Shown: one piece after another, positions 5,807-45,329 of the stretch
How the letters are laid out: every line of letters starts with the position of its first letter
Numbering within the stretch: position 1 is the stretch's first letter
DNA from: Gracilinanus agilis
Taxonomy: Eukaryota
NCBI RefSeq assembly: GCF_016433145.1
Contig: NC_058131.1
Location: 401,709,440 to 401,765,013 of the forward strand
Reading direction: 5' to 3'
Length of the DNA: 55,574 nt
Notes under the pieces: generated by a model
Seen by the model: the letters and a program-made list of their open reading frames with translations, nothing else
Told to the model about the DNA's origin: nothing
The model's database searches: none
Translations under genes and position numbers: made by a program

Positions 5807-5994
5807 CTTTTTTTTTTTAAACCCTTGTACTTTGGTGTATTTTCTCATAGGTGGAAGATTGGTAAGGGTGGGCAATGGGGGTCAAGTGACTTGCCCAGGG
5901 TCACACAGCTGGGAAGTGGCTGAGGCCGGGTTTGAACCTAGGACCTCCTGTCTCTAGGCCTGACTCTCACTCCACTGAGCTACCCAGCTGCCCT
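5807..5994 (-). mobile_element. SINE1_Mdo-type tRNA-derived SINE
   Basis: Full-length, head gggcagctgggtagctcagtgg on the minus strand; TSD ccatatgctttt on both sides. Confidence 0.92.
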
Positions 5995-6052
5995 CCATAT
6001 GCTTTTAAAAAAGAAGCAAGAGAATATGAAGCATTTTAAAAAATATTTCTCT

Positions 6053-6245
6053 CTGGGGGCAGCTGGGTAGCTCAGTGGATTGAGAGCCAGGCCTAGAGAT
6101 GGGAGGTCCTAGGTTCAAATCTGACCTCAGACACTTCCCAGCTGTGTGACCCTGGGCAAGTCACTTGACTCCCATTGCCTACCCTTACCACTCTTCTGCC
6201 TTGGAGCCACTCCAAGACAGTAGGTAAGGGTTTAAAAAAAAAGGA
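6053..6245 (+). mobile_element. SINE1_Mdo-type SINE
   Basis: ggggcagctgggtagctcagtggattgagagccaggcc...; TSD aaaaaatatttctct at 6038-6052 and 6246-6260. Confidence 0.92.
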
Positions 6246-12639: not shown

Positions 12640-14398
12640 TATCAATAGCAATAAGACCAGAGAAAGAAAAAAGCTATAAAGAGAGATAAAGAGGACATCA
12701 AAATTATCCCTATTTGCTGATAATATGATGGTGTACTTAGAAAATCCTAGGGAATCAGCAAAGGCAATAGCTTCAGAGAAGCAAGTTGAACCTTCAGAAT
12801 CAACACTAAAAAATCAATAGCATTTCTCCAAAGTAATGACAAAATCCCAAAGGCAATACTAGAAAAATCCCATTCCAAATAACAAAAAAATTCCATAAAG
12901 TATGTGATCAATCTACCAAAACTCACAAAAGACTTTTGTACATTCAGTTACAATGTGCTTTTAAAGACATTAAATGAATGAAAGGTAATATTCAGTGCTC
13001 ATGGCTGGACCATGCCAATATAATAAAAATGACTATGTTACCAAAGTTAATATGTAATTTTAATGTCAAACCAATCAAATTATCAAAGTGATACTTTATA
13101 GTACTTGATAAAATAATGACGGTATTAATTTGGAGAAACGAGATCTATAATATCGATGAAAACAATGAAAAGAGGTAGGAATAAAGGGAGAATAGCACTT
13201 TCACACTTCAAACTATATTATAAAGCAGTAATATAAAGTTCCTGTAATATTGGTTAAAAACATAGAGAGGTAAATCAGTGGTACAGACTAGATAACAGAG
13301 AATCAGAAACAATGGAGTTCAATAACCCATCATTTGATAAAGTGAGGGGAAAAAGTTTAGGTAAAAGCTCCTGGTTTGATAAAAAGCTGATGGGAAAACT
13401 GGGAAGCAATCTGGCACAAATTAAGTTCAGGCCAACATACATCATATTCCATGATACATTCTGAGTGGATACATGATCTTGATATTGAAGATCACACTAT
13501 AAAAATTAAAAGAGAAGCAGATTATATACCTATTATATATGGGTATTATTAATTAAATTTATTGTTTATTATATTATATTCACCAAATAAAGAAAAGACA
13601 CAATTAAAAAAATAAAATAGACAAAATTACATGAAACTGAAAAGCTTCCACATGGACAAAATTAATTCAGATAAGATAAGGGAAACTATAGAATGGGGTA
13701 AAAAAAAAACCTGTCTACTGGCTGTTGCTTTACTGCCTAAAAACAAACCCATGCCTCCTCCATCTTCAATACACTTTCTCTTGATCCATCCACTTCTGCT
13801 AGCTATCACCCCACATTTCTCCTGACTTCTGTGGCTAAACCTCTTCAGAAGGCCACCTACAGGTGATACAAACTATTAACTACCACATGAAAGGATATTC
13901 TGAATCACTAATTATAAAATATGCATATCAAAACAACCTTAAGATTTTACTTTATACCCTGCAAATCCATGACAAAAAGAGGCCCCAAAAATGGCAATAG
14001 ACAGTGTTTGAAGGGTTGTGGCAAAATAGGCATACTGGTGCCTTGCTGATGAAGCTGAGAATCAGTACAACCATTTTGGAAAGCAACTTGGAATTATGCA
14101 CATAAAGAGTCTGAAATGTCCATTCTCTTTTGACCCAGGAATTCTATGGGATTATTATATCCTAAAGAGGTTATTGATAGGAAGAAAATATCCTTATAGC
14201 CCAAAATATTTTTAACAGCACTTTTTGTGATAGAAAAGAATTTGAAACAAAGTAAATATTCTTCAACTGGGGTATGATCAAACAAATTGCAGTCTGATGA
14301 TGGAATAATAATGTGCTGTGAGAAAGTATGAATGTAATGAATATAGAAAAATATGTAAAGATCTCCATGAACTGATGCAAAATGAAGAAAGTGGAGCC

Positions 14399-18075: not shown

Positions 18076-18324
18076 CCTAACTTCCTTTTCGCCGTCTTTC
18101 CAGCCCTGCCAAACAGCTGTTTATACCACTGCAGCAATCCTTCAGAAATATGAGACTGGGCCCCCACTATATTCCTCTGAAGTGAGAGTTTCTCAGAGAA
18201 GGGTCTATGGCGCAGCGAACGCGACTGAGTCTGTGCTGCTCTTCTCTCTGCTGTATCTTATGACGGAGCAGGAAATCACCCTCAGGAAGCTCCAGGAGCA
18301 ATCGTGTTTCAGCTCTAATTCCGT

Positions 18325-18366
18325 ACTGGCCAGCAGCGGCACCCAGAGTTTCATTCCCAAATTGCA
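18325..18366 (-). promoter_or_regulatory. Pcdh promoter CSE (CGCT box, CTCF-binding) of exon 15661-18075
   Basis: Coding strand TGCAA-N13-CTCTGGGTGCCGCTGCTGGCCAGT, about 260 nt upstream of the ATG in a CpG-rich segment. Confidence 0.9.
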
Positions 18367-19255: not shown

Positions 19256-19714
19256 AAAAATAAAGAAATAAGCTATTCCTGTTCACTTTAATGGACATTT
19301 TTGTTTCAGTTTGGCTTTAATGATCATGATCCTTTTCTTTAAAATCCTAGAAGACATCCAGCACTTCCTTATCTGTTGAAAAGCTATTTACCTCAATTCA
19401 AACCCTTAGAGAACCCATTTTCGTTCCTATGTTTAGGGTTAGGAGAATTGTTTTGGAAACAGGACAGTGAGCAGAATAATGATTCTGAACCGTTTCTTTA
19501 GGAGTGTGCTTGAATTTGTATCGAGAAAGAATTAAGCATAAAAAAAGAATTGAAGAACATTCAAGTGTCTTACAAATTCATCATTCACCGTCTGAATTAT
19601 GAAATTAGATTCCTTTGGGAAGTCCAGGGAAGGATACTAAGCTTACCATGTATTATTATGAATTTTCAAGTCAAAGCACAATTGGAAGAATAACAAAAGT
19701 AGGTAAAACTTAGG

Positions 19715-21100
19715 AAACTCTGTTTTTATAAAAGGTGATATCATAAGTAAATTAGGAAAGCATGGAAAAAATATACCTGTCAGATGTATGGATAAGGGAA
19801 GAATTTATGACCAAATGAGATAGAGAGGTTTATTGGAAGTAACATGAATAGTTTTGATTACATGAAAATAAAAGGGTTTTGCACAAAGAAAACCAATGCA
19901 GCAAAAATTAGAAGAAAAATAGGAAACTGGGGGGAAATTTTGTAGCAAATTTTTTTATAAAGGGCTCATTCCTCAAATGTATGGGAAACCAAGCCAAATT
20001 TATAAAAAATATGAACCATTCCCCAACTGACAAATGATCAAATGATATGAGCAGGTAGTTTTCAGAACAAGACATTAAAACTATTAAAAGTCACTTGAAA
20101 AAATGCTCTAAATCACTAATTTGAAAAAAACAAACCAAAATGATTTTGAGATGCCACCTCACATTTATAGTATTGGCTAATATGACAGAAAAGGAAAATG
20201 ACATGTTAGAGGGGATGTAGAAAAATTGGGGCACCAATGCACTGTAGGTAGAGTTGTGAAATAGTTAAACCATTTTAGAGAACAATTTGGAACTACACGC
20301 AAAGGGCTATAAAACTGTACATACCGATTGACCCAACAATACCATGTCTAGGTCTGAATCCTAAAGAGATCAAATGAAAAGGAGAAGACCTTATTGGTAT
20401 AAAAATATTTAGAGCAGCTCTTTTTGTAGTGACAAGGAACTGGAAATGGAGGGGATGCCCATCAATTAAAGAATGGCTTGACAAGCTGTAGTATGTGATT
20501 GTGATGGGATAATATTGTGCTCTAAGAAATGAGAAGTGGGATGTTTCAGAAAAACACGGTGAGACTTAAATGAAGAGAAAGCCCAAATCACTTATTACAA
20601 ATTGGACTACATTCTCCATGGGGCATCTCTCTCCTACATCTCTATTGATTCTGAGATTGGCATCCTCTATGTTCTGCTCTCTTTTTACTATGAAGAGAAC
20701 CAGGAGAACATTGTACACATTGACAGCAATATTGTAGCGATGATCAACTGGGACTTATCTACTCTGATCAAGACAATGATCCAAGACTTCCTAAGTACCC
20801 GTGATGAAAAATGCTATTTCCAGGAAAAGAATTGATGAACTCTGAGTACAGAATGAAGCATACTTATAAAACATTCTTTCTTTCTTTGCCTGTGTGCTTT
20901 CTTTTGCAACATGGATAATATAGAAATTTTTTTGCATGACTTCACATGTAAAATGAATATCATCTTGCTTGCCTTCTCAAGGGGTGGGGAAAGAAAGAGA
21001 AGAAGAGAATTTGGAAGTTAAAAAATTTAAAAATGAATGTTAAAATTTTTTGCAGGTAACTGGGAAATTATTAATGCAATGAATAAAAATATATGAAAAA
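19715..21100 (+). mobile_element. 5'-truncated marsupial L1 (ORF2 C-terminus and 3'UTR), interrupted by a Pcdh fragment
   Basis: Collinear with 40.6-41.9 kb; reverse ORF 20293..20484 is the typical antisense reading of the L1 end. Confidence 0.88.
20571..20694 (+). pseudogene. Inverted 124-nt fragment of Pcdh gamma-A EC5 coding sequence inserted in an L1 relic
   Basis: Reads EEKAQITYYKLDYILHGASLSYISIDSEIGILYVLLSFYYE on +. Hand alignment to the reverse complement of 22713-22839 gives 23 substitutions plus one codon gap (~81%). Flanked by ATGAAGAGAA at 20570-20579 and 20690-20699. Confidence 0.88.
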
Positions 21101-21872
21101 AAAGCTCCCTGATGAAATTCTTTAATTATAGCCTCGTTCTATAAGATCTCTGGTTTTTAAATAGAATATCTTCAATACCATTATTTGGTGATGAATCTAT
21201 AGTTTAATCCTCAGTAAGACATACGTTGTGTTTTACTCTAGAGTGCATATACTATTCTATCACCCTCTTTCCTGAACAATAAACTACAAAGGAGAGGCCA
21301 GATATGTCATAAAAGGATAACAAATTTCACTTGGGTGATAGAATATGCTAAATGAAAACCTAAAGACTTAAATGCTAAGATTCCTTGCCCAGAAGAAAGC
21401 CTGAGTTGGTCAGAAGAAGATGAGTTTGCCCTAAGTCCAGGAGAGAGCAGATGATAGCTAAAACATCAATATCCATAACTTTCTATGAGCATTTTCAGAC
21501 TAAGACAATGAACTTTTTGAACCAGCAAAAAAAAAAAAAATGGGTGTTTGTCTAGTGCTAACTTAGGAACCTCTTTAGCAGTATTCTAACCAATCAGAAA
21601 GAATCAATTGTCTACACAAATATAACAGTTCAAATGTCAGGAAGTTAAATGAAGAGTATCACTCAGAGTAGAATAATAGATATTGCATTAAGCCATTAGT
21701 TGAATGAAGACAAATAAAGGAATGTCATATTTTAGCAACCTAGCAATGATCAGATAAAAATAAATTTAAATTTCATAAATGAATTATTCTATCATCTTTG
21801 TAGAAAATGAAAAACAAACATAATAGATAATGAAGAAATAAGATAATTATTGATAAGGTGAAAGAAACTCAC

Positions 21873-24278
21873 AGAAATGAGAGCAGGATCTCTGGCAGAA
21901 AACCTTGAATCCTCTGGTATTAATAAGGGCTCCTTTTTCTCACAACTCTGCTGACTAATTAAAGTATCTGCATAATTGGGCTGGGGGAAAAGCAATTGGC
22001 TTTTCCTAGAATCCATGGTGAGGGAAACCTCATGGGAATAAGTCTGGAGAAAAGCCTGAACTCCTTCAAGACCCATAAACTGGGAAGGTGGGCCACTGGA
22101 GGACTGTAACAGCTGTGAATTTCGCCAGGACCTTAACTTGATCACCAATAAGACAATGATGAAGACAAAGAACAGAGAAGACACCACAGCCACTGCAATT
22201 ACAAGATAAAGAGTGAGATTTGCGTCTTCCAGGTCTCCTGGAGTCTCCGGATTGCTGAGATCTGAGAGGATCTCGGGGATGCTGTCAGCCACAGCCACTG
22301 TGACACTAACTGTTGCAGATAAAGGAGGTTCCCCATTGTCAGAGACTGCCACCGTTAGAATCTGTTTGAGGGAGTCTTTGTCATGGAAAGTTCGGGCTGT
22401 CCTGATCTCACCTGTGTGCAGATCCACTGAGAAAAGCCCAGGCTCTGTTACTTTCAGCAGACGGTAGGATAGCCAGGCATTCTGGCCAGAGTCTGCATCC
22501 ACTACCACTACCTTGGTCACCAGGTAGCCTGGCTCTGCAGAGCGAGGAGCCAACTCCACTCCTGTGGAGCCATCAGTGGGGAAAGTGGGGTACAGGATTT
22601 CTGGGGCATTATCATTTTGATCCAGGATGAACAGAGTTAGAGACACGTTGCTGCTGAGAGGTGGATCGCCCCAGTCCTTGGCAGTTACTTGAAGCTGCAA
22701 ATCCCGAAATTGTTCGTAATCAAAAGAGCACAGAGCATAGAGGACGCCAGTCTCAGAGTTAATAGAGATGTAGGAGGAGAGAGAGGCCCCATAGAAAATA
22801 TAATCCGTAATGGAGTAAGTGATTCGGGCGTTCTCTTCAGTGTCAGAGTCACTAGCGGTCACTGAATAAATGGAAGAGCCTCTTGGATTATTTTCAGGTA
22901 TGTAGGCAGAATAGGACTTCTGACTGAAGCTGGGAGGGTTGTCGTTGGTGTCTTCTACTTGTAGGGAGATGTGAATGTTTGTAGATAACAATGGAGTTCC
23001 TTGGTCTATGGCTGTTACTGTGACATTGTACATGGATGTCTGTTCCCTGTCTAGAGTTCTGTCAGTCACTAAACTGTAATAATTTGCATATGATTTTTCT
23101 AATTTAAAAGGCAAGTGACCATGAATGGAACACATAATGTGACCATTATTCCCAGAGTCTCGGTCATGCACCTTTAAAAGGGCAATCACAGTTCCTGGAG
23201 GTGAGTTTTCAGGGATTGAACTGGCAGAAGAAGTGACCGTCACCTCCGGAGGATTATCATTCACATCTAGTACCCTGACCAGTACCTTTGCACTAGTTAG
23301 AAGACCACCACCATCCTGCCCTTGAATTTCCATTTCATAGATTTTCGATTCCTCATAATCCAGTGATTCTTCAAGTATTAGTTCCCCTGTCCGGGAATTT
23401 AGCTGGAAAATCTCTGAAGCTTTGTCGTCGATGTTCCGAAAAGAATAAGTTACTTCTCCGTTGACTCCCTCATCCGAATCCGTAGCGTTCACTGCTAGCA
23501 GCAGCTTCCCCTTGGGCACGTTTTCTCGAACACTCACGCTGTACAAGGACTGAGTAAATACTGGGGCGTTGTCGTTCGCGTCTAGGACCAACACGCGGAT
23601 TCGAGCAGTTCCAGACAGGCCTGGATCTCCTCCATCCAAGGCCTTGAGGATAAGCTGGTGAACAGATTCTTCCTCCCGGTCCAGGGCCCGTTCCAACACC
23701 AGTTCCGGGTACTTGGCCCCATCGATCCCACTTAGCACATTCAGAGAAAAGTGATTGTTCTGACTTAGCTGGTAGCTCTGGAGGGAATTTACTCCTATGT
23801 CTGGATCCCTCGCACTGGGAAGCCCAAAACGTATACCCGGGGCCGCGTTTTCATTAATTTTTATTTCCACTTCATCTGTCCGGAAGCGTGGAGCGTTATC
23901 ATTAATGTCCGTCACTTCTATTTCTAAGCCATAAATTTTCACTTTGTCCTCCATTAAAATTTCCACATTTAAAAGACAACTAGAAATTCCAAGACAAATT
24001 TTCTCTCTGTCTATTCTGTCCGCGGTGATTAAGCTGCCGCTTCTGACATTGAGAGCGAAATGTTGCTTACCTCCGGAAACTATGCGGGCTCCTCGCTCTG
24101 ACAGCTTGTGGGGCTCCAGACCCAGGTCCTTGGCGATGTCACCCACGAAAGAGCCCTTCTCCATCTCCTCGGGAATAGAGTAATGGATATGCACAGCCCG
24201 GGTCTCCCACAGCGATCCCAGGAGACAGCAAAGCAGGATTCTCCCTCTGTAGTGCCAAAGCTTCTGCGGAGAGATCAT
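21873..24278 (-). CDS. PCDHGA: Protocadherin gamma A-type variable exon (resembles gamma-A11 from recall), 802 codons
   Basis: ORF 21792..24281, whose first codon is GTG; the first ATG is at 24278. Six EC repeats, A-type motifs QNAWLSY and [14 protein letters not shown]. Donor TCT|GTGAGT at 21873/21872, phase 0. [14 protein letters not shown] and [13 protein letters not shown] match my recall of human PCDHGA11. Confidence 0.95.
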
Positions 24279-24516
24279 CACTGCATCCCCAGCTGAATGG
24301 TTTGGATTTCCTATTTTTTCCGGTTATCTCTGAACTGATTCTTGTTTTTCCTCAAGACATCGGGAATATTGACATTCACTGAAGGAGTCCGAAAGGCTCT
24401 GGGGCTCTTGATCTGGGTCTCCGTGAAAATCAGCAATGAGCCTTTCGGTTCTGTGGTCTTTGTATTGTGAGAGAAAAGACAGGCAGGCGGGATCTCGCAG
24501 AACCTTTTTCTTCCGG

Positions 24517-24558
24517 ATTGGTGAACAGCGACGCCCAGAGCCTTAATCAATTATTGCA
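24517..24558 (-). promoter_or_regulatory. Pcdh promoter CSE with CCAAT box of exon 21873-24278
   Basis: Coding strand TGCAA-N13-CTCTGGGCGTCGCTGTTCACCAAT, about 250 nt upstream of the ATG. Confidence 0.9.
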
Positions 24559-25289
24559 TCCTTTTAGGTAAACTTCGTAGATTAACAAAATATTAACGAT
24601 GTATGTGATTTTCTTGTTTTTGTTTTACATGCATTTCTTTAAGAGAAGGCAACAGTGATTGTATGCAGTTTTCGGTTAGTTACGCAAACATGAATGCTCC
24701 TTGTAGCTTTAAATTTCAATTACCTTTTCCCATTACACCCTTGGAATACTAGGATTTCATTACTAGGGATTCTTATAAGATGAAAAAAATCAATGAAGTA
24801 ACTTAATTGTGTTTAAAATGTGAATACATTTTAGGAGTGAATTCTCATCTCCAAAAAGTTCCAGCATTTGTTTTATCCTTTTATTTTAAAGAAAACATTC
24901 CCCATATAATTTGTCGTGTATAACCCTCAAAGTTTTACCTAATTAGCCCAAAATGCCAAAATGGACTCTATAAGAACAAGAATATATTGAGTTCTCATTT
25001 TAAAACGAGTATGTAAGAAAATAACTTTAATAAAAGAAGTAACTTTTTTTTTATCATTCTTAAGGGTAAGAAAATGATGAGAAATAGTCTAAACCACATT
25101 GAAAAGATTATTCCAATTTACCATTCTAATTCTGTTGATAAAATTCATCAGAAACCATAGTGGATATAATGTTACCACATATAATTAAAGATTCAGGTTG
25201 ATGGACATGTTAAACAATGCTAATGGGAGTGAAAATTCTTTTACTTTATCTCATACCTATGTAGAACTAAGGAGGGAATTATATTATTA

Positions 25290-25388
25290 TGCATCTACCG
25301 CCACCACCTTGGTGACCAGATGGCCAGGCTCAGCTGATCCAGGGATCATGTCAAAGAGGGCTGAGCTGTCAGGGTCCAGTAGTGGATA
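25290..25388 (-). pseudogene. 99-nt same-orientation copy of the EC5-EC6 linker/EC6 start of the adjacent exon, in the intron
   Basis: 93/99 identical to 26168-26266. Flanked by the 12-nt direct repeat ATATTATTATGC at 25281-25292 and 25386-25397. Confidence 0.95.
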
Positions 25389-25537: not shown

Positions 25538-27955
25538 CTGTCCAAGAGTGTTGGAATGACAATTGACATCACCATTTAAGTTATTCTTGAATAACATGGA
25601 AGCAATATTTGTGTTGAAAAGTTCTGGAGGACACTGGTCAGTTGATTTCAGGTAATTAAATTCTGTATGTCCTGGATCTGGTGCTACACACAGATTATAG
25701 GAATAAGGCAAAGTTCCTTCACTGTAGTTTGGGGGGATATTGAGTTCAGATTTAGAGTGAAGATCCCCCCGGAAACAGCTCCATACTCTAGGATCAGAGG
25801 ATCTCTGAAGGTGCAGAGCAATGGCCAATGTCACAGTCACGAGAAATAGTAGAGATATTAGGGCCAGAGCCACAACCAAGTAAAACTGTATCTCAGATTG
25901 GGATTCGGAGGTGGTTGTACGCTCCTCCTTCATCTCAGGCAATGCCTCCTGCAGACTGTCTGCAAAGACTAGATGCAGAGCCACAGTGGCCGACAGAGGG
26001 GGCTGGCCTCCATCCTGCACGGAGACCAGAAGGCGGTGCCGAGCTGCATCTCGGTCAGTCAAAGCCCTCGCAGTCCTGATCTCGCCTGTGCGCAGCCCCA
26101 GGCTGAAGAGCCCGGGATCCGTGGCCTGCAGCACGCGGTAGGCCAACCAGGCGTTGTGTCCAGAGTCTGCGTCCACTGCCACCACCTTGGTGACCAGATG
26201 GCCAGGCTCAGCTGATCGAGGGATCATGTCAAAGAGGGCTGAGCTGTCGGGGTCCAGTGGTGGATAGAGGATGTTTGGGGCATTGTCATTGCTGTCCAAG
26301 ATAAACACTTGTAAGGTGACATTGGTACAGAGGGAGGGAGAACCTGCATCCTGGGCCTGCACAATCAGTTCAAAGGTATGAACTTGCTCATAGTCAAAGG
26401 AACGCTGAGCAAATAAGTCCCCACTGTTACCATTAACAGACACATAGGAGGATAGAGGCAGGAAGGGTAAGTTGCTACTGAGGATGGAGTAGGACACCTG
26501 GCCATTTTTTTCCAGGTCTGGGTCAGTGGCTGAGATTTGGGCTATGGAGGCTCCAGAGGGATTGTTCTCAGGTACATAAATGACATATGAGGTTTGGAGG
26601 AAAGTGGGGGGATTGTCATTGATGTCTGCAATGTACAGGGAAATTATTTTGCTGGTGGACAGAGCAGGATTCCCCTTGTCTGTGGCTGTCACAGTAATGT
26701 TATATTCCAAGGTTTGCTCCCGATCCAGGGCCCCATCTGTCAATAACTTGTAGTAATTCCTGGAAGAGGACTCTATTTTAAAGGGAACAGTTCCTTCTAT
26801 ACCACACACAATCTCTCCATTCTCTCCAGTATCTCTATCATCTGTTTTAATCAGAGCAATTACTGTCCCAGGCACTGTGTCCTCAGGGATAGGATTAGAC
26901 AGAGACGTTAATGTTATTTCGGGAACATTGTCATTTTCATCCCTAACTTCTAAAACAACTTTGCATTGTGCAACCAGAGAGCCAGCATCCTTGGCTTCTA
27001 CATCCATGGTATATACCTTTGTTTCTTCAAAGTCTAGAGTCTCCTTAATAACGATTTCTCCAGTGGTTGGATCCAGTCTAAACTTGTGTGAAGCATCTTT
27101 GGTGATGCTTGTGAAGGAGAAGGTGATCTCTGCATTAACCCCCTCGTCTTTATCCGTGGCTGTCACTTGCAGTACCGAGGATCCAGAGGGCAAGTTCTCT
27201 GACACGCTTGCTCGGTAGACATCTTGACTGAAGACAGGCGGATTGTCATTAGCATCCGTGACTCTGATCCTGATCTGAGCGGTGCTACTTCGGATGGGAT
27301 CGCCCCCATCAACTGCGGTCAAGATTAAGTGGAGGGAATTCTGGATTTCTCGATCGAGGGATTTCTCCACCACCATTTCTGGATATTTACTGCCATCAGG
27401 ATTATCTTTCACTCTCAGAGAAAAATAGGGGTTCGAATTTATCTGGTAAAATTGCAAAGAATTGAGCCCAACATCTGGATCGTCAGCTGATTCAAGAATT
27501 AATCTAGTACCTGGCAGTATAGACTCACTGATTTCTAAATTTAATTCATTTCGACTGAATCGAGGCTCGTGATCGTTAATATCCTGAATCGTCACAACCA
27601 CATGGAAGATATTTAAGGGATTTTCCACTACTATTTCCAACTGTAATTCACAGGCCTGATTTTTTCTGCATATGTATTCTCGATCTATTCTGTCACTGAC
27701 CAGCAGATCCCCATTGTCTGCGTCCACGGAAAAGTATTTCTTCTCCCCAGTAACTCGCATTTTCCTGGCGGGCAAGACCCGGATACCGATCCCCAGATCT
27801 TTGGCGAGATTCCCCACCACTGACCCTTTCTCCATTTCCTCTGGAATGGAGTACCGGACCTGCTCGGAAAGCACGCAGCAGAACAAAGAAGTCAAGAAGG
27901 GAAACAGTACTTGCCTCCTCATTGTTATTCCTGGTTCCCGGGAGCGGCGCCGCAT
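25538..27955 (-). CDS. PCDHGB: Protocadherin gamma B-type variable exon (B6/B7-like), 806 codons
   Basis: ORF 25523..27955, six EC repeats, EGTLPYSYNLCVA cytoplasmic motif. Donor CAG|GTAGGG at 25538/25537, phase 0. An alternative in-frame ATG lies at 27922. Confidence 0.95.
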
Positions 27956-32828: not shown

Positions 32829-33058
32829 TGCTTTCTTGCTGCCAAATTATCGAGTTTTCCAATAATGCAGACTGTGCCTAGATCAATTCTTGTATCCTCT
32901 GTATCTTAAGCTATCGGCAGCCAAAGATTGAGATGCAAGCTTGGAGAGCTGGGTGGCTGAGTCTCCGTGCAGCCCAGACTGTGTATATCTGATATTCTGG
33001 GGCTTTGTGCTTTTGAGTTGTGAGTCGTGCCGGATCTCTCCACGCAGTTTTCTTCCCG

Positions 33059-33100
33059 ATTGGTGAACAGCGGCGCCCAGAGTCCTAATCAATTACTGCA
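33059..33100 (-). promoter_or_regulatory. Pcdh promoter CSE with CCAAT box of exon 30408-32828
   Basis: Coding strand TGCAG-N13-CTCTGGGCGCCGCTGTTCACCAAT. Confidence 0.9.
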
Positions 33101-33757
33101 TTCACGCACACATTTTGGGAAAAAAGGAAAACTGCCTAACATTTGTTATATACTTTATTTCTTGCTACATAACATTGTTCCCCATTTTCTCCTTACTATA
33201 TTCTGTGGGAAGCTATTCCTTGTTTTTTTTTCCCGCAAGTGGGAGGGACAAAGAGAGATAAAGTTCAATAGTACAATTAAATGTTAGATTCCAATAGAAT
33301 GTTTGTTAGTCTTAATTTAAACTTTATTATGTTTACATTTGGCAGATTTTCCTGAATGCCCTTGGAAACCGAGCTCTTTTTCATCTTATGTATTTCATAA
33401 GGCAGGAAATAATTTTACTTTAATTTCCGTCTCTTTTAGAAGTAGCAATTTAAATACTCCAACTCTTTTTAGTGTTTTCAGTCCTAGAATGACTGTATAA
33501 AAACATATGACTTCTTAAATATATTAAATTTATATATAGTATATATATTAAATATGTAACATCACACGCTTGTACGTTAGGATTTCATTTAACCAGCACT
33601 GCTGGAGATTAATCTTTCGTGGAAGACAGCTTTCCTATGACTTTCATTTTTCTTGAGATTACTGGGATGGTGTAAGAAATAGAAGATATGAAGATATCAA
33701 TAAAACTATTTTTTTACAGGAAGAAAAAGACCTACGGGTTCCAACGCTATTGCTACC

Positions 33758-39404: not shown

Positions 39405-42390
39405 CATTATGACCAGGTGGGATTTATATTAGAAATGCAGGAATGGTTTGATATTAGGAGAACTATAAAAATAATTGATCACATCAATAACAAAAACAAC
39501 AAAAATCATATTATTCTGCCAAAAGATGCAGGAAAAGCTTTTGATAAAGAAGAGCACTCATTCTTTTAAAAATCATTAGAAAGCAAAGGAATAAATGGAG
39601 CTTTTCCTAAAATGATTAATAGCACCTATCTAAAACCAAGAGTAAGAATTTTTTGTAATGGAAAGAAATTAGAAGTCCTCAATAGCTCAGAGGTGAAGCA
39701 AGGATTTCCATTATCACCTTTATTATTCAATATTATACTAGAAATGTTAATTAAAGCAATAAGACAAGAAAAAGAAATTGAAGGAAAGAGAATAGGTAAA
39801 TAAACAAAACTATTACTCTTTGCAGATGATATGATCTATACTTCGAGAACTATAGAAAATAAACTAAAAAGTAGTTGAAAAAATTAACCATAACAACGTT
39901 ACAGGATATAAAATAAATCCACATAAATTACCAGCACTTCTCTATATTACCAACAAACTAAGCAGGAAGAGATAGAAAGATGAATTCTATTTAAAAATAA
40001 CTGCAGGCATTATAAAGCACTTGGGAGTCTACCTACCAACACAAACTCAGGTACTATATGAACACAATTACAAAGAATTTTTTATACAAATAAATACAGG
40101 TCTAAACAACTAGAAAAATAATAACTGTTCACAGGTAGGCTTGTAGCTAATACAATAAAAGTGACAATTCTATCTAAAATAATTTGTTTATTCAGTGCCA
40201 TACCAAATTACTAAAGAATTATTTTATAGAGCTAGAAAAATAATAACAAAACCTACCTTGAAGAACAAAAAGCCAAATATGTCAAGAGAATGAAAAAAAA
40301 ATTAAGAAAGGCAGTCTAACAGTACCAGATTTAAAACTACATTATGAAGTGATGATCATAAAAAAAACTGGTACTGGATAAGAAATAGGATTGTTGATCA
40401 GTGGAATAGATTACATATACAATATGCAAAAGTAAATGGACATTGTAATCTAGAGTTTAATAAACCCAAAGATCCAAGATCTTGGGGTGAGAATTCATTC
40501 TTCAACAAAAACTACTGGGAAACCTGGAAAGTGATCTGGCAGAAATTAGGTGCAGCTGGACCTCTCACACCATATAACAAGATATGATCAAAATGGTTGT
40601 ATGATTCAGACATAAAAGATGATATAAACAAATTAGGTGAGCATGGAAAGAAATTATCTGTCAGATCTAAGGACAGAGGAATATTTTATGACCACACGAG
40701 ATAGAGAAGATCGCAGGAAGCAAAATGGATAACTTTGATTTTATTAAATTAAGAAGTTTTTGTGCAAACAAAACCAATGCACCCAACATTAGAAGGTTAG
40801 CAGGAAATAGGGCAAAAAACTTTTTTTTGGCAGCAAGTTTCTCTGATAAAGGTTTAATTTCTCAAATATATAGGGAACTGAATCAATTTTACAAAAATAA
40901 GTTCCATTCCCATTGATAAATGGTTAAGGGATATGAACACAAACTTTTCAGAAGAAATTAAAGCTATCAATAGCTATATAAAATGCTTTAGATCACTAAT
41001 AATTAGAGAATTGCAAATTAAAACAGCTCTGGGATATCACCTTACACTCATCAGATTGGCTAATGACAGAAAAGGAAAATGATAAATGCTAGAGGGGTTG
41101 TAGGACAATAGGTATACTAATGCATTGTTGGTAAAATTTAATCTAATCATCTGGAGAACAATTTGGAACTATGCCCAAAGTGCTATAAAACTTTACATAC
41201 CCTTTGATCCAGCAATAACACTACTTGGTCTGTATCCCAAAGATATTAAAAAAGGGGAAAGCACCTATAACTACAAAAATATTTATAGCAGCTCTTTTGT
41301 AGTGGCAAAGAATTGGACATTGAAGGGATGCACATCTCTTGAGGAATGGCTAAACAAGCTGTGGAATATGACTGCGATGGAACACTATTGTGCTGTAAGA
41401 AATGACAAGGAGGATAGTTTGAGAAAAAACGAGAAAATGTATTAACTGATGCAAAGCAAAGTGAGCAAAACCAGGATATCACTGTAAACAGTAACAGCAA
41501 TATTGTAATGATTATCAATTGTTACTTTGTGACAACATTTGTACAACCCAGTGGAACTGCTTGTCAGCTTTTGGAGAGGGAAGGAAGAAGGGAGGTAAAG
41601 AAAATGAATCATGTAAACATGGAAAAATATTTAAAAGTAAATAAAGCAAAAAATTTGACCAATACAATGATCAATGACAATTCCAAAGGAATCATGATGA
41701 AAAGTACTATCCGCCTCTGAAGAGAGAACTAATAAACTCTGCCTGAAAATAATCTCTTTCACTTGCTTTATTTTTCCCAATTTTTGGATGGGACGAAACC
41801 ATGGCTAATGTGGAAATATATTTTGTATGACATTACATGGATAAGGGGTACCATATTTCTTGTCTTCTCAATGAGGGAGAGAGGGCCTAGAGTAAGGGAG
41901 GGGACTTGGAACTTGAAATAAAAATGAATATCAAAAATCACTCATTTGTGAATGAAACATGTTTATGTTAATGAATAATTCAAGAAATATGCAAAGACAT
42001 ATAAACTGATGCAAAGTGAGGTAATCAGAAACAGGAATATAATATATATAATGACTACTACAAACCAGATGGAAACCACAAAATAAAAGATGGTTAAATG
42101 CCATGTAAGTATAATGACCAAATTTGGCCCTAGAGAAGAATTCAGAAAATGCAACTACCTCCCTTCTTAAAAGAGACTATACATATGGGATGTTACATAA
42201 AAGCTTTTTTTAAATGGTTGATAAACTTGCTGGTTTTGTTCAAAAACAAAAACAAAAACAAAAACAAACCAGGTTTTTTTTGGCCTGTGATGATTTGCTA
42301 GGGAAGGATGGTGGGGTAAGGAATATATTCATAAACAAATGTGATGTTAAACAAAAGATGTCAATAAAAATGAAAATAAAATAAAATTTA
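39405..42390 (+). mobile_element. Degenerate marsupial L1 (RT through 3'UTR) with nested additional L1 3'-end pieces
   Basis: ORF 39612..39803 (VKQGFPLSPLLFNIILE), tttgcagatgatatg (FADDM), ORF 41125..41445 (IPFDPAITLLGLYPK). Extra 3'-UTR segments at ~41520-41655 and ~41980-42170. Confidence 0.92.
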
Positions 42391-45040: not shown

Positions 45041-45287
45041 TGTTGTAGCACTGCAGAATTGTTTCGTGTATTCTTTCTAGAGTACTATTTCCAGAGTAGC
45101 GATGGTTTCCTCATAGTTGGGGCAATCAGCATTTACTAGTGATTTCTGAGTTCAAAGGACTGGTAGTGGTGGCGGGGGAGCTGAATTTCCGGGCAACACT
45201 CTGCTCCTATATGTCTGATTTGCCGGTGTTTTGAGAGTTGGAGGCGGGGATGGTCTCGCAGGATCTCTGAATGTATTTCTTTCCTTG

Positions 45288-45329
45288 ATTGGTGAACAGC
45301 GGCGCCCAGAGTCTCAAACGATTACCGCA
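45288..45329 (-). promoter_or_regulatory. Pcdh promoter CSE with CCAAT box of exon 42632-45040
   Basis: Coding strand TGCGG-N13-CTCTGGGCGCCGCTGTTCACCAAT. Confidence 0.9.

What the first reader, a model, noticed from the sequence alone, without database searches (positions are those of the whole stretch)
20570..20699. Inverted piece of Pcdh EC5 coding sequence patched into an intronic L1
Seen: 124 nt on the + strand, opposite to the cluster, align to the reverse complement of 22713-22839 (EC5 of the gamma-A exon whose donor is 1.2 kb away). There are 23 substitutions and one exact-codon gap, and the frame is still open. The same 10-mer ATGAAGAGAA sits at both junctions and overlaps donor-matching bases at each end. 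There is no poly(A). Compared with the other L1s here (41450, 14360), a short L1 stretch (ctgatgca...gtgag) appears to be missing at the junction. Inference: a locally templated break-repair insertion (microhomology/polymerase-theta type, DNA- or RNA-templated), not a processed pseudogene.
Basis: partly seen in the sequence, partly recalled or inferred. Interest (0 to 1): 0.7.

Follow-up and report, generated by a model that had tools for sequence, protein, structure and literature searches.

The report
Inverted exon copy patched into L1
A 121-base copy of the neighbouring protocadherin exon was pasted backwards into a broken, dead L1 element in an opossum ancestor; it is a real, old and decaying repair scar of a known kind, not a gene or an assembly error.

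Summary
Window 20571-20694 (+) matches the reverse complement of 22713-22839 with 23 mismatches and one 3-nt gap (E 2e-27). That stretch is EC5, residues 481-523, of the adjacent gamma-A12-like protocadherin variable exon.

The window is Gracilinanus agilis: an annotated protein matches the exon 100% over 802 aa.

The piece interrupts one 5'-truncated + strand L1 (about 19728-21103). There, 121 nt (20575-20695) replace 21 nt that hundreds of L1-family contigs carry. The patch has single-copy depth, while the L1 flanks are 100 to 10,000 times deeper, so it is not part of the L1 consensus.

Contigs from two organisms, about 10% diverged, span both junctions, so it is not an assembly chimera. The codon gap is a later deletion. 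The open frame is uninformative.

The copy keeps the residues L-H found in Australasian orthologues, where both the Gracilinanus and Monodelphis exons have F-Y. It therefore predates that split, and it is about as old as the L1 itself.

Best reading: a microhomology-primed templated insertion from a donor 2 kb away. DNA versus RNA template is unresolved.

The scan's first readers noted similar patches elsewhere in this genome; I checked only the one in this window. Known kind, modest interest.

The parts
19728..21103 (+). Host element: a 5'-truncated, dead L1 (3' part of ORF2, 3' UTR and an A-run remnant at 21096-21103). It lies antisense to the Pcdh-gamma cluster, in the intron downstream of the gamma-A12-like exon.
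   Evidence: It is collinear with another L1 copy: 19728-20554 matches 40612-41428 and 20698-20756 matches 41469-41527. L1-family depth of 1e3-1e6 runs from the 19692 bin to the 21099 bin.
20575..20695 (+). The patch: 121 nt that replace 21 nt of L1 (CTGATGCAAAGTGAAGTGAGC).
   Evidence: An L1 paralogue contig joins 20574 to 20696 with 21 other letters between. The loose-end consensus before 20696 is the same in all four runs. Depth is about 37 in the 20588-20651 bin.
20571..20694 (+). The stretch that aligns to the donor, in sense orientation on the + strand, the same sense as the L1.
   Evidence: 79.5% identity, E 2e-27.
20570..20579 (+). Left copy of the 10-mer ATGAAGAGAA. ATGAA is L1, TGAA (20571-20574) is the microhomology shared with the donor, and GAGAA is donor-derived.
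   Evidence: Three-way comparison of window, donor and L1-family consensus.
20690..20699 (+). Right copy of the 10-mer. A(T)GAA matches the donor's end (TACGAA today), G at 20695 fits neither the L1 nor the donor's end, and AGAA(CC) is L1 resuming at 20696. I read GAGAAC as a re-copy of the donor's start motif.
   Evidence: The re-copy step is inferred.
20629..20630 (+). Site of a later 3-nt deletion in a CTCTCT run. This is the 'codon gap' relative to the donor.
   Evidence: Organism B's spanning contig has TCT inserted after 20629.
22713..22839 (-). Donor segment: EC5 coding sequence, residues 481-523. It still sits intact in the exon, about 2.0 kb from the patch.
21873..24278 (-). Donor variable exon (protocadherin gamma-A12-like). 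The coding part ends at the splice donor near 21873, 1.18 kb from the patch.
   Evidence: P0035 [Gracilinanus agilis] residues 1-802 map here at 100% identity.

Best explanation
This is a fossil templated insertion. An L1 had landed antisense in the intron downstream of the gamma-A12-like protocadherin exon. A break, or a stalled synthesis, occurred in its ORF2 tail. About 120 nt were then copied from the EC5 part of that exon, 2 kb away, in inverted orientation relative to the donor. The donor stayed intact.

Shown: 21 nt of L1 were lost and 121 nt gained. The left junction shares TGAA between the L1 and the donor. There is no poly(A). The patch is single-copy and is shared by two species. 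Its substitutions are spread evenly over codon positions, as expected for neutral decay.

Inferred, step 1: the left 3' end ...ATGAA annealed to the donor's TGAA and was extended to the donor's TA(C/T)GAA.

Inferred, step 2: the new end again read (A/C)TGAA-like, so it re-annealed at the same start motif TGAA-G-AGAAC and added GAGAAC.

Inferred, step 3: AGAAC then paired with the right L1 end AGAACC. This accounts for every base at the junctions and for the 10-mer appearing twice.

I favour a DNA template, by replication or repair template switching of the MMBIR/FoSTeS or synthesis-dependent end-joining type. The event happened before the Gracilinanus-Monodelphis split and close in time to the L1's own integration. 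No function is indicated.
For: Alignment statistics.

L1 'empty' form, single-copy depth of the patch, and spanning contigs in X1 (344 nt, 0 mismatches, 20438-20781) and X2 (358 nt, 31 mismatches, 20438-20784, another organism about 10% diverged in unique flanks).

Donor assignment: the patch is 81.5% identical to the adjacent exon, while that exon is only 72-75% identical to its in-window paralogues. The patch peptide best matches this orthologue group in eight marsupials.

Neutral decay: 12 insert-derived substitutions fall at codon positions 2:5:5.

Age: the patch keeps DYILHGASL as in Dromiciops and Trichosurus, while both the Gracilinanus and Monodelphis exons read DYIFYGASL.

Junction anatomy.

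Known signature: an inverted copy of a nearby template flanked by microhomologies is the described MMBIR templated-insertion pattern (PMC8421209).
Against: Size and distance: the donor is 2 kb away and the patch is 121 nt. That exceeds the 100-bp radius used to define MMB-TIs and, from my own knowledge, the usual size of Pol theta insertions.

Timing: the patch lineage (raw 10-16%, ML branch 0.21) is as diverged as the host L1 lineage (about 0.135-0.167). The patch may therefore date from L1 integration itself, which also fits a reverse-transcriptase template switch.

Orientation: patch and L1 have the same sense, as that rival predicts. By chance this has a 50% probability.

Template: the piece crosses no splice junction, so the sequence cannot separate DNA from RNA templating.

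Re-priming step: it is inferred, and it needs either an ancestral TAT codon or a 3-nt GAA match.
Confidence: 0.6

Rival explanations
1. A reverse-transcriptase template switch during integration of this L1. While copying L1 RNA, ORF2p jumped by microhomology (AGAAC, then TGAA) onto a Pcdh-gamma transcript. It copied about 120 nt of EC5 and jumped back to the L1 RNA 21 nt upstream. Patch and L1 would then have entered together.
For: Patch and L1 are in the same sense on the + strand. The patch is as diverged as the L1 itself. Template-switching RT and templated insertions at L1 integration sites are described (PMC11702581). An unchecked scan note reports a spliced mRNA fragment inside another old L1 in this genome (s1-153897).
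Against: It gives no reason why the second template should be the exon 2 kb from the integration site, unless local nascent RNA is favoured, which is not established. It needs a neuronal gene to be transcribed in the germline or early embryo. Leaving the L1 RNA and returning to it 21 nt further upstream is unusual. The second exon fragment in this window (25290-25388) matched no in-window L1 copy, although I did not test what its flanks are, and it is also copied from its nearest exon.
Confidence: 0.2
2. Class 2 templated sequence insertion. A cDNA or RNA fragment of a Pcdh-gamma transcript was captured as a patch at a double-strand break in the L1 and joined by end joining, independently of L1 integration.
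For: There is no poly(A), a microdeletion of 21 nt and junction microhomology, which are the class 2 features (PMC5110952). The source is exonic.
Against: Class 2 insertions are described as coming from distant regions, apparently at random. Here the donor is the nearest exon. Nothing in the piece shows an RNA origin, since it crosses no splice junction.
Confidence: 0.1
3. A two-step history with a true target-site duplication. The L1 copy had already lost about 20 nt and read ATGAAGAGAACC. A staggered break then duplicated that 10-mer, and each 3' end primed on the donor: 9 nt TGAAGAGAA at one end and A.GAA at the other.
For: An exact 10-mer lies at both ends. The second fragment in this window is flanked by a perfect 12-mer with 3-nt overlaps to its donor at both ends, which looks like a staggered-break product.
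Against: It needs an earlier, independent deletion of 21 nt, plus a G, exactly at the later insertion point. The one-event model explains the same bases without that coincidence.
Confidence: 0.07
4. Chance similarity or an assembly artefact.
For: None found.
Against: E is 2e-27. Independent short-read contigs from two organisms span both junctions.
Confidence: 0.01

Closest known systems
MMBIR / FoSTeS-type templated insertions (MMB-TI; PMC8421209) and short template-switch mutations (four-point model; PMC5453318)
   Same: An inverted copy of a nearby template, microhomology at the junctions, replacement of a short target stretch, and an intact donor.
   Different: The template is 2 kb away and the copy is 121 nt. 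The published detectors look within 100 bp or at short range. This is a fixed germline event more than one genus-level split old. A third junction (the re-copied GAGAAC) implies more than one switch.
Polymerase-theta end joining with templated insertions / synthesis-dependent MMEJ (PMC7165422, PMC2943611)
   Same: Short microhomologies (4-5 nt), a deletion at the break, and repeated anneal-extend-dissociate cycles that leave direct repeats at the junction.
   Different: From my own knowledge, typical insertions are a few to a few tens of nt, templated within about 100 nt of the break. The enzyme cannot be identified from sequence.
Class 2 templated sequence insertions (TSI/TSIP; PMC5110952)
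   Same: No poly(A), no classical TSD, a microdeletion with microhomology, a patch of about 100-200 nt, and an exonic source.
   Different: Those are RNA-derived and come from distant loci. This donor is local and inverted, and an RNA origin is not shown.
L1 chimeric retrocopies by RT template switching, and complex L1 integration products (PMC11702581)
   Same: A foreign piece in L1 sense orientation inside an L1, junction microhomology, and an age similar to the L1's.
   Different: From my own knowledge, known chimeras put the second RNA at the 5' end. Here synthesis would have returned to the same L1 RNA 21 nt further upstream.
Processed pseudogene / class 1 L1-mediated retrocopy
   Same: A copy of coding sequence placed away from the gene.
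   Different: There is no poly(A) and no 3' end of the mRNA. The piece is 124 nt from the middle of a 2.4-kb exon, and target DNA was lost rather than only duplicated.

Membership tests
Microhomology-mediated templated insertion (MMBIR/template-switch type) | The insertion is a copy of a sequence that is still present nearby | tested here: met
   The donor at 22713-22839 is intact in the open exon, 2.0 kb away. This is beyond the 100-bp radius of the published detector.
Microhomology-mediated templated insertion (MMBIR/template-switch type) | Inverted orientation relative to the template | tested here: met
   The patch is on the + strand and the donor on the - strand.
Microhomology-mediated templated insertion (MMBIR/template-switch type) | Microhomology at both junctions | tested here: met
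   Left junction: TGAA. Right junction: AGAAC if GAGAAC was re-copied from the donor's start motif, otherwise GAA(C). The right side depends on the model chosen.
Microhomology-mediated templated insertion (MMBIR/template-switch type) | DNA (not RNA) template | not testable with these tools
   The piece lies inside one exon, so no splice junction or intron boundary is crossed.
Polymerase-theta (TMEJ) templated insertion | Short insertion templated from sequence flanking the break | tested here: not met
   The insertion is 121 nt, copied from 2 kb away. It works like an iterative microhomology search, but its scale is atypical.
Class 2 templated sequence insertion (PMC5110952) | No poly(A), no TSD, microdeletion and microhomology | tested here: inconclusive
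   No poly(A), a 21-nt deletion and microhomology are all met. The 10-mer direct repeat is composite rather than a clean TSD.
Class 2 templated sequence insertion (PMC5110952) | Donor in a distant genomic region, copied via RNA | tested here: not met
   The donor is the adjacent exon. RNA origin is untestable.
Processed pseudogene / class 1 L1-mediated insertion | Poly(A) tail, TSD, and an insertion site like TTTT/A | tested here: not met
   There is no A-run after 20695, the piece is internal to the exon, and the target ATGAA/CTGATG is not an EN-type site.
L1 subfamily-specific internal sequence | Present in many L1 copies | tested here: not met
   The patch bin has depth of about 37, against 1e3-1e6 for the flanks. 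Roughly 460-600 L1-family contigs per run carry the 21-nt stretch instead.
L1 chimera by RT template switching | Same sense as the L1 and same age as the L1 integration | tested here: inconclusive
   Same sense is met. The ages overlap within error.

The most novel reading that the evidence does not exclude
The inverted EC5 copy is not just a scar. With the exon it can still form an imperfect duplex of about 124 bp (-159 kcal/mol) in any pre-mRNA that reads through this exon, and the splice donor sits in the 2-kb loop. It may have been kept since before the didelphid radiation, because it influences splicing, exon choice or A-to-I editing of this gamma-A isoform. The low divergence of the patch between organisms A and B would then reflect constraint: 5 of 121 positions, against about 10% in the flanks. 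A wider version of this reading is that the Pcdh-gamma cluster is prone to local templated patching, since this window holds two exon-derived patches.
Probability: 0.05. Interest if true: 0.65.

Novelty: new member of a known kind. Interest (0 to 1): 0.3.

Why it matters
This is a clean, datable germline example of a long (121 nt), kilobase-range, inverted templated insertion. The 'empty' target can be reconstructed from the L1 family, so every junction base can be assigned. Such cases help calibrate how far and how long template-switch repair reaches in vertebrate germlines.

The L1 host also sets up a natural test: does this kind of patch arise during L1 integration or later? The patch creates an exon-intron inverted repeat in a protocadherin pre-mRNA, which could be checked for editing. 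Otherwise it is an ordinary neutral relic.

Tried and rejected
Ideas rejected:
- Open frame as evidence of selection. By simulation, 53-70% of neutral histories keep it open, and insert-derived changes fall 2:5:5 over codon positions.
- Duplex-preserving selection. Only 8 of 15 transition differences are G-U compatible in the sense transcript, which is no bias (my count on the table).
- Patch as part of the L1 family.
- Another in-window exon as donor.
- Pfam on the 42-aa patch peptide gave no hit because it is too short.

Steps that did not work:
- One Pfam call failed because I included an L1 frame with stop codons.
I could not look for the orthologous L1 there.
- The patch's status in organisms C and D could not be read. 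Only exon-like contigs ending near 20686 cover 20603-20686, and no listed difference row shows any X4 or X10 depth at 20580-20581. The tool warns that holes prove nothing, and its cap is one call.
- A search for a third exon-derived fragment near 13711, hinted at by a scan note, found nothing against in-window exons.

Caveat on one count: the low A-B divergence in the patch rests on the truncated difference table, so it is weak.

Full report
**What is there**

The + strand at 20571-20694 aligns to the reverse complement of 22713-22839 with 23 mismatches and one 3-nt gap (79.5% over 127 columns, E 2e-27). The window holds seven long ORFs on the - strand, alternating gamma-A-like and gamma-B-like types.

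The donor ORF (21792-24281) has Cadherin_2, six cadherin repeats and Cadherin_C_2. The copied part is residues 481-523, in the fifth repeat.

An annotated protein, 'protocadherin gamma-A12-like [Gracilinanus agilis]', matches the exon at 100% over 802 residues (24278-21873). The window is therefore from that opossum, and the splice donor lies 1.18 kb from the patch.

**The host**

The patch interrupts one 5'-truncated L1 on the + strand, about 19728-21103, with an A-run remnant at 21096-21103. The flanks are collinear with another L1 copy: 19728-20554 matches 40612-41428, and 20698-20756 matches 41469-41527. Patch and L1 are both in sense orientation on the + strand, but in different reading frames.

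**Reads** (contigs of four coded runs laid at 80% likeness or more)

- *Junctions.* A 344-nt contig of X1 (organism A, probably the same species and possibly the same sample) lies on 20438-20781 without a mismatch. A 358-nt contig of X2 (organism B) lies on 20438-20784 with 31 mismatches. Organism B differs from the window by about 10% in the unique flanks. Both contigs span both junctions, so the structure is not an assembly chimera and it predates the A-B split.
- *Copy number.* Summed depth is 1e3-1e6 over the L1 flanks but about 37 in the 20588-20651 bin, which is the single-copy level. The patch is therefore not part of an L1 subfamily.
- *The 'empty' L1 form.* About 460-600 L1-family contigs per run end at 20696 with the preceding consensus TTATATGAACTGATGCAAAGTGAAGTGAGC. 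One L1 paralogue contig joins 20574 to 20696 with 21 other letters between. So 21 nt of L1 were replaced by 121 nt (20575-20695).
- *The codon gap.* Organism B has TCT after 20629, so the gap is a later deletion in a CTCTCT run.
- *Older L1.* A contig of X10 (organism D, about 16% diverged) runs from the unique flank into the L1's 5' end, so the L1 predates that split.
- *Not readable.* Whether C and D have the patch could not be read. The contigs covering 20603-20686 there end near 20686 in every run. I take them for exon contigs that break at the paralogue-conserved [13 protein letters not shown] stretch.

**Which exon is the donor**

The patch is 81.5% identical to the adjacent exon. It is 70% and 62% identical to the other two gamma-A-like exons and about 51-54% to the gamma-B-like ones. 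The adjacent exon is itself only 72-75% identical to its in-window paralogues.

At protein level the patch best matches the gamma-A12 orthologue group in eight marsupials (63-70%), against 55% or less for any other paralogue retrieved. The adjacent exon's lineage is therefore the donor.

**Age**

The patch reads DYILHGASL, as in Dromiciops and Trichosurus. The Gracilinanus and Monodelphis exons both read DYIFYGASL. The copy was therefore made before the L-H to F-Y change, which means before those two genera split. Convergent back-mutation at both first-codon positions is unlikely; my rough estimate is about 0.5%.

Using paralogues as outgroups, 12 of the 23 differences are insert-derived, 3 are donor-derived and 8 are ambiguous. 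The ML insert branch is 0.21.

The host L1 lineage is about 0.135-0.167. This comes from half the corrected distance to its sister copy, plus a three-copy comparison. The patch is thus about as old as the L1 itself, and the two ages cannot be separated.

**Decay**

Insert-derived changes fall 2:5:5 over codon positions. An open frame is expected in 53-70% of neutral histories. Nothing indicates coding constraint.

**Junction anatomy**

- The L1 sequence ends at ...ATGAA (20574) and resumes at AGAACC (20696).
- The donor's start motif is C-TGAA-G-AGAAC-G. It contains both TGAA, shared with the L1's left end, and AGAAC, shared with the L1's right end.
- The donor's end is TA(C)GAA. Several paralogues have TAT at that codon.
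- The G at 20695 fits neither the L1 (which has C) nor the donor's end (which has C). It does fit the start motif.

The simplest one-event reading has three steps:
1. The left 3' end ...ATGAA primes at TGAA and is extended about 116 nt to ...TA(T/C)GAA.
2. That new end resembles the primer, re-anneals at the same motif and adds GAGAAC.
3. AGAAC pairs with the right end.

This explains the duplicated 10-mer (20570-20579 and 20690-20699) with no untemplated base. It is inference.

A two-step alternative is an earlier 21-nt deletion followed by a staggered break with a true 10-nt duplication. It needs an extra coincidence, so I rank it lower.

**Mechanism and rivals**

An inverted copy of a nearby template flanked by microhomologies is the described signature of MMBIR-type templated insertions (PMC8421209), and of template-switch mutations generally (PMC5453318). 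Here the reach (2 kb) and the length (121 nt) are larger.

The features also overlap class 2 templated sequence insertions: no poly(A), a microdeletion and microhomology (PMC5110952). Those are RNA-derived and come from distant loci.

Three things keep an ORF2p template switch onto a local Pcdh transcript alive, at about 20%:
- the patch shares the L1's sense;
- the patch shares the L1's apparent age;
- L1 integration is known to produce templated insertions and template-switching RT (PMC11702581).

Its main weakness is that it does not explain why the second template is the nearest exon. I put the DNA-templated switch at about 60%. That figure includes the possibility that the switch happened during L1 integration or second-strand synthesis.

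**Possible consequence**

In a pre-mRNA reading through this exon, the two arms can still pair, at -159 kcal/mol against -43 ± 5 for shuffles. Of the 15 transition differences, only 8 are G-U compatible, so there is no sign of selection for pairing (my count).

Organism B differs from the window at only 5 of 121 patch positions, against about 10% in the flanks (Fisher p about 0.03-0.04). The difference table is truncated, so I treat this as unexplained and weak.

**Context**

A second exon-derived fragment lies at 25290-25388 on the - strand, in direct orientation. It is 94% identical to 26168-26266 of its own upstream exon and is flanked by a perfect 12-mer. Scan notes list several other templated insertions in this genome, which I did not check.

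**Verdict**

This is a known kind of mutation, seen here in an unusually legible and old example.

Noticed in passing
window 25290-25388 (-), donor 26168-26266: A second exon-derived fragment: 99 nt, 94% identical to the EC5/EC6 region of its own upstream gamma-B-like exon. It is in direct orientation, about 135-230 nt past that exon's ORF end. It is flanked by a perfect 12-mer, GCATAATAATAT, whose last 3 nt (TAT) and first 3 nt (GCA) overlap donor bases. It looks like a staggered break filled from the nearest exon.
   Followed up: partly
window 20575-20695 versus flanks: Organism B's spanning contig shows only 5 substitutions and one 3-nt indel inside the patch. That is 4%, against about 10% in the unique flanks and 11.5% in the L1 part of the same contig (Fisher p 0.03-0.04). 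The cause could be chance, an incomplete table or weak constraint.
   Followed up: partly
window 18170-18328 (-): The annotated Gracilinanus and Monodelphis gamma-A12(-like) models (854 and 846 aa) do not join the constant exons. They splice the variable exon to a short terminal exon lying just upstream of the next variable exon's start codon. That places the L1 and the patch inside the model's intron.
   Followed up: no
window 24506-24559, 33029-33101, 45258-45329: Short stretches of 54-74 nt, 80-91% alike, sit about 200-300 nt upstream of three gamma-A-like exons. They are probably the conserved promoter element of clustered protocadherins (the naming is from my own knowledge).
   Followed up: no
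window 5810-6242: A 433-nt stretch that is 80% identical to its own reverse complement. Its halves match a multi-copy SINE-like family found across the window.
   Followed up: no
window 19532-19718 (unique flank): Shared differences suggest organisms B and C are closer to each other than to the window's species, with D outside: 3 sites shared by B and C only, 8 sites where A differs from all three, and 14 sites where only X2 (organism B) differs; X4 or X10 give no coverage at a few of these. If so, the patch in A and B implies it was present in C's ancestor too.
   Followed up: partly
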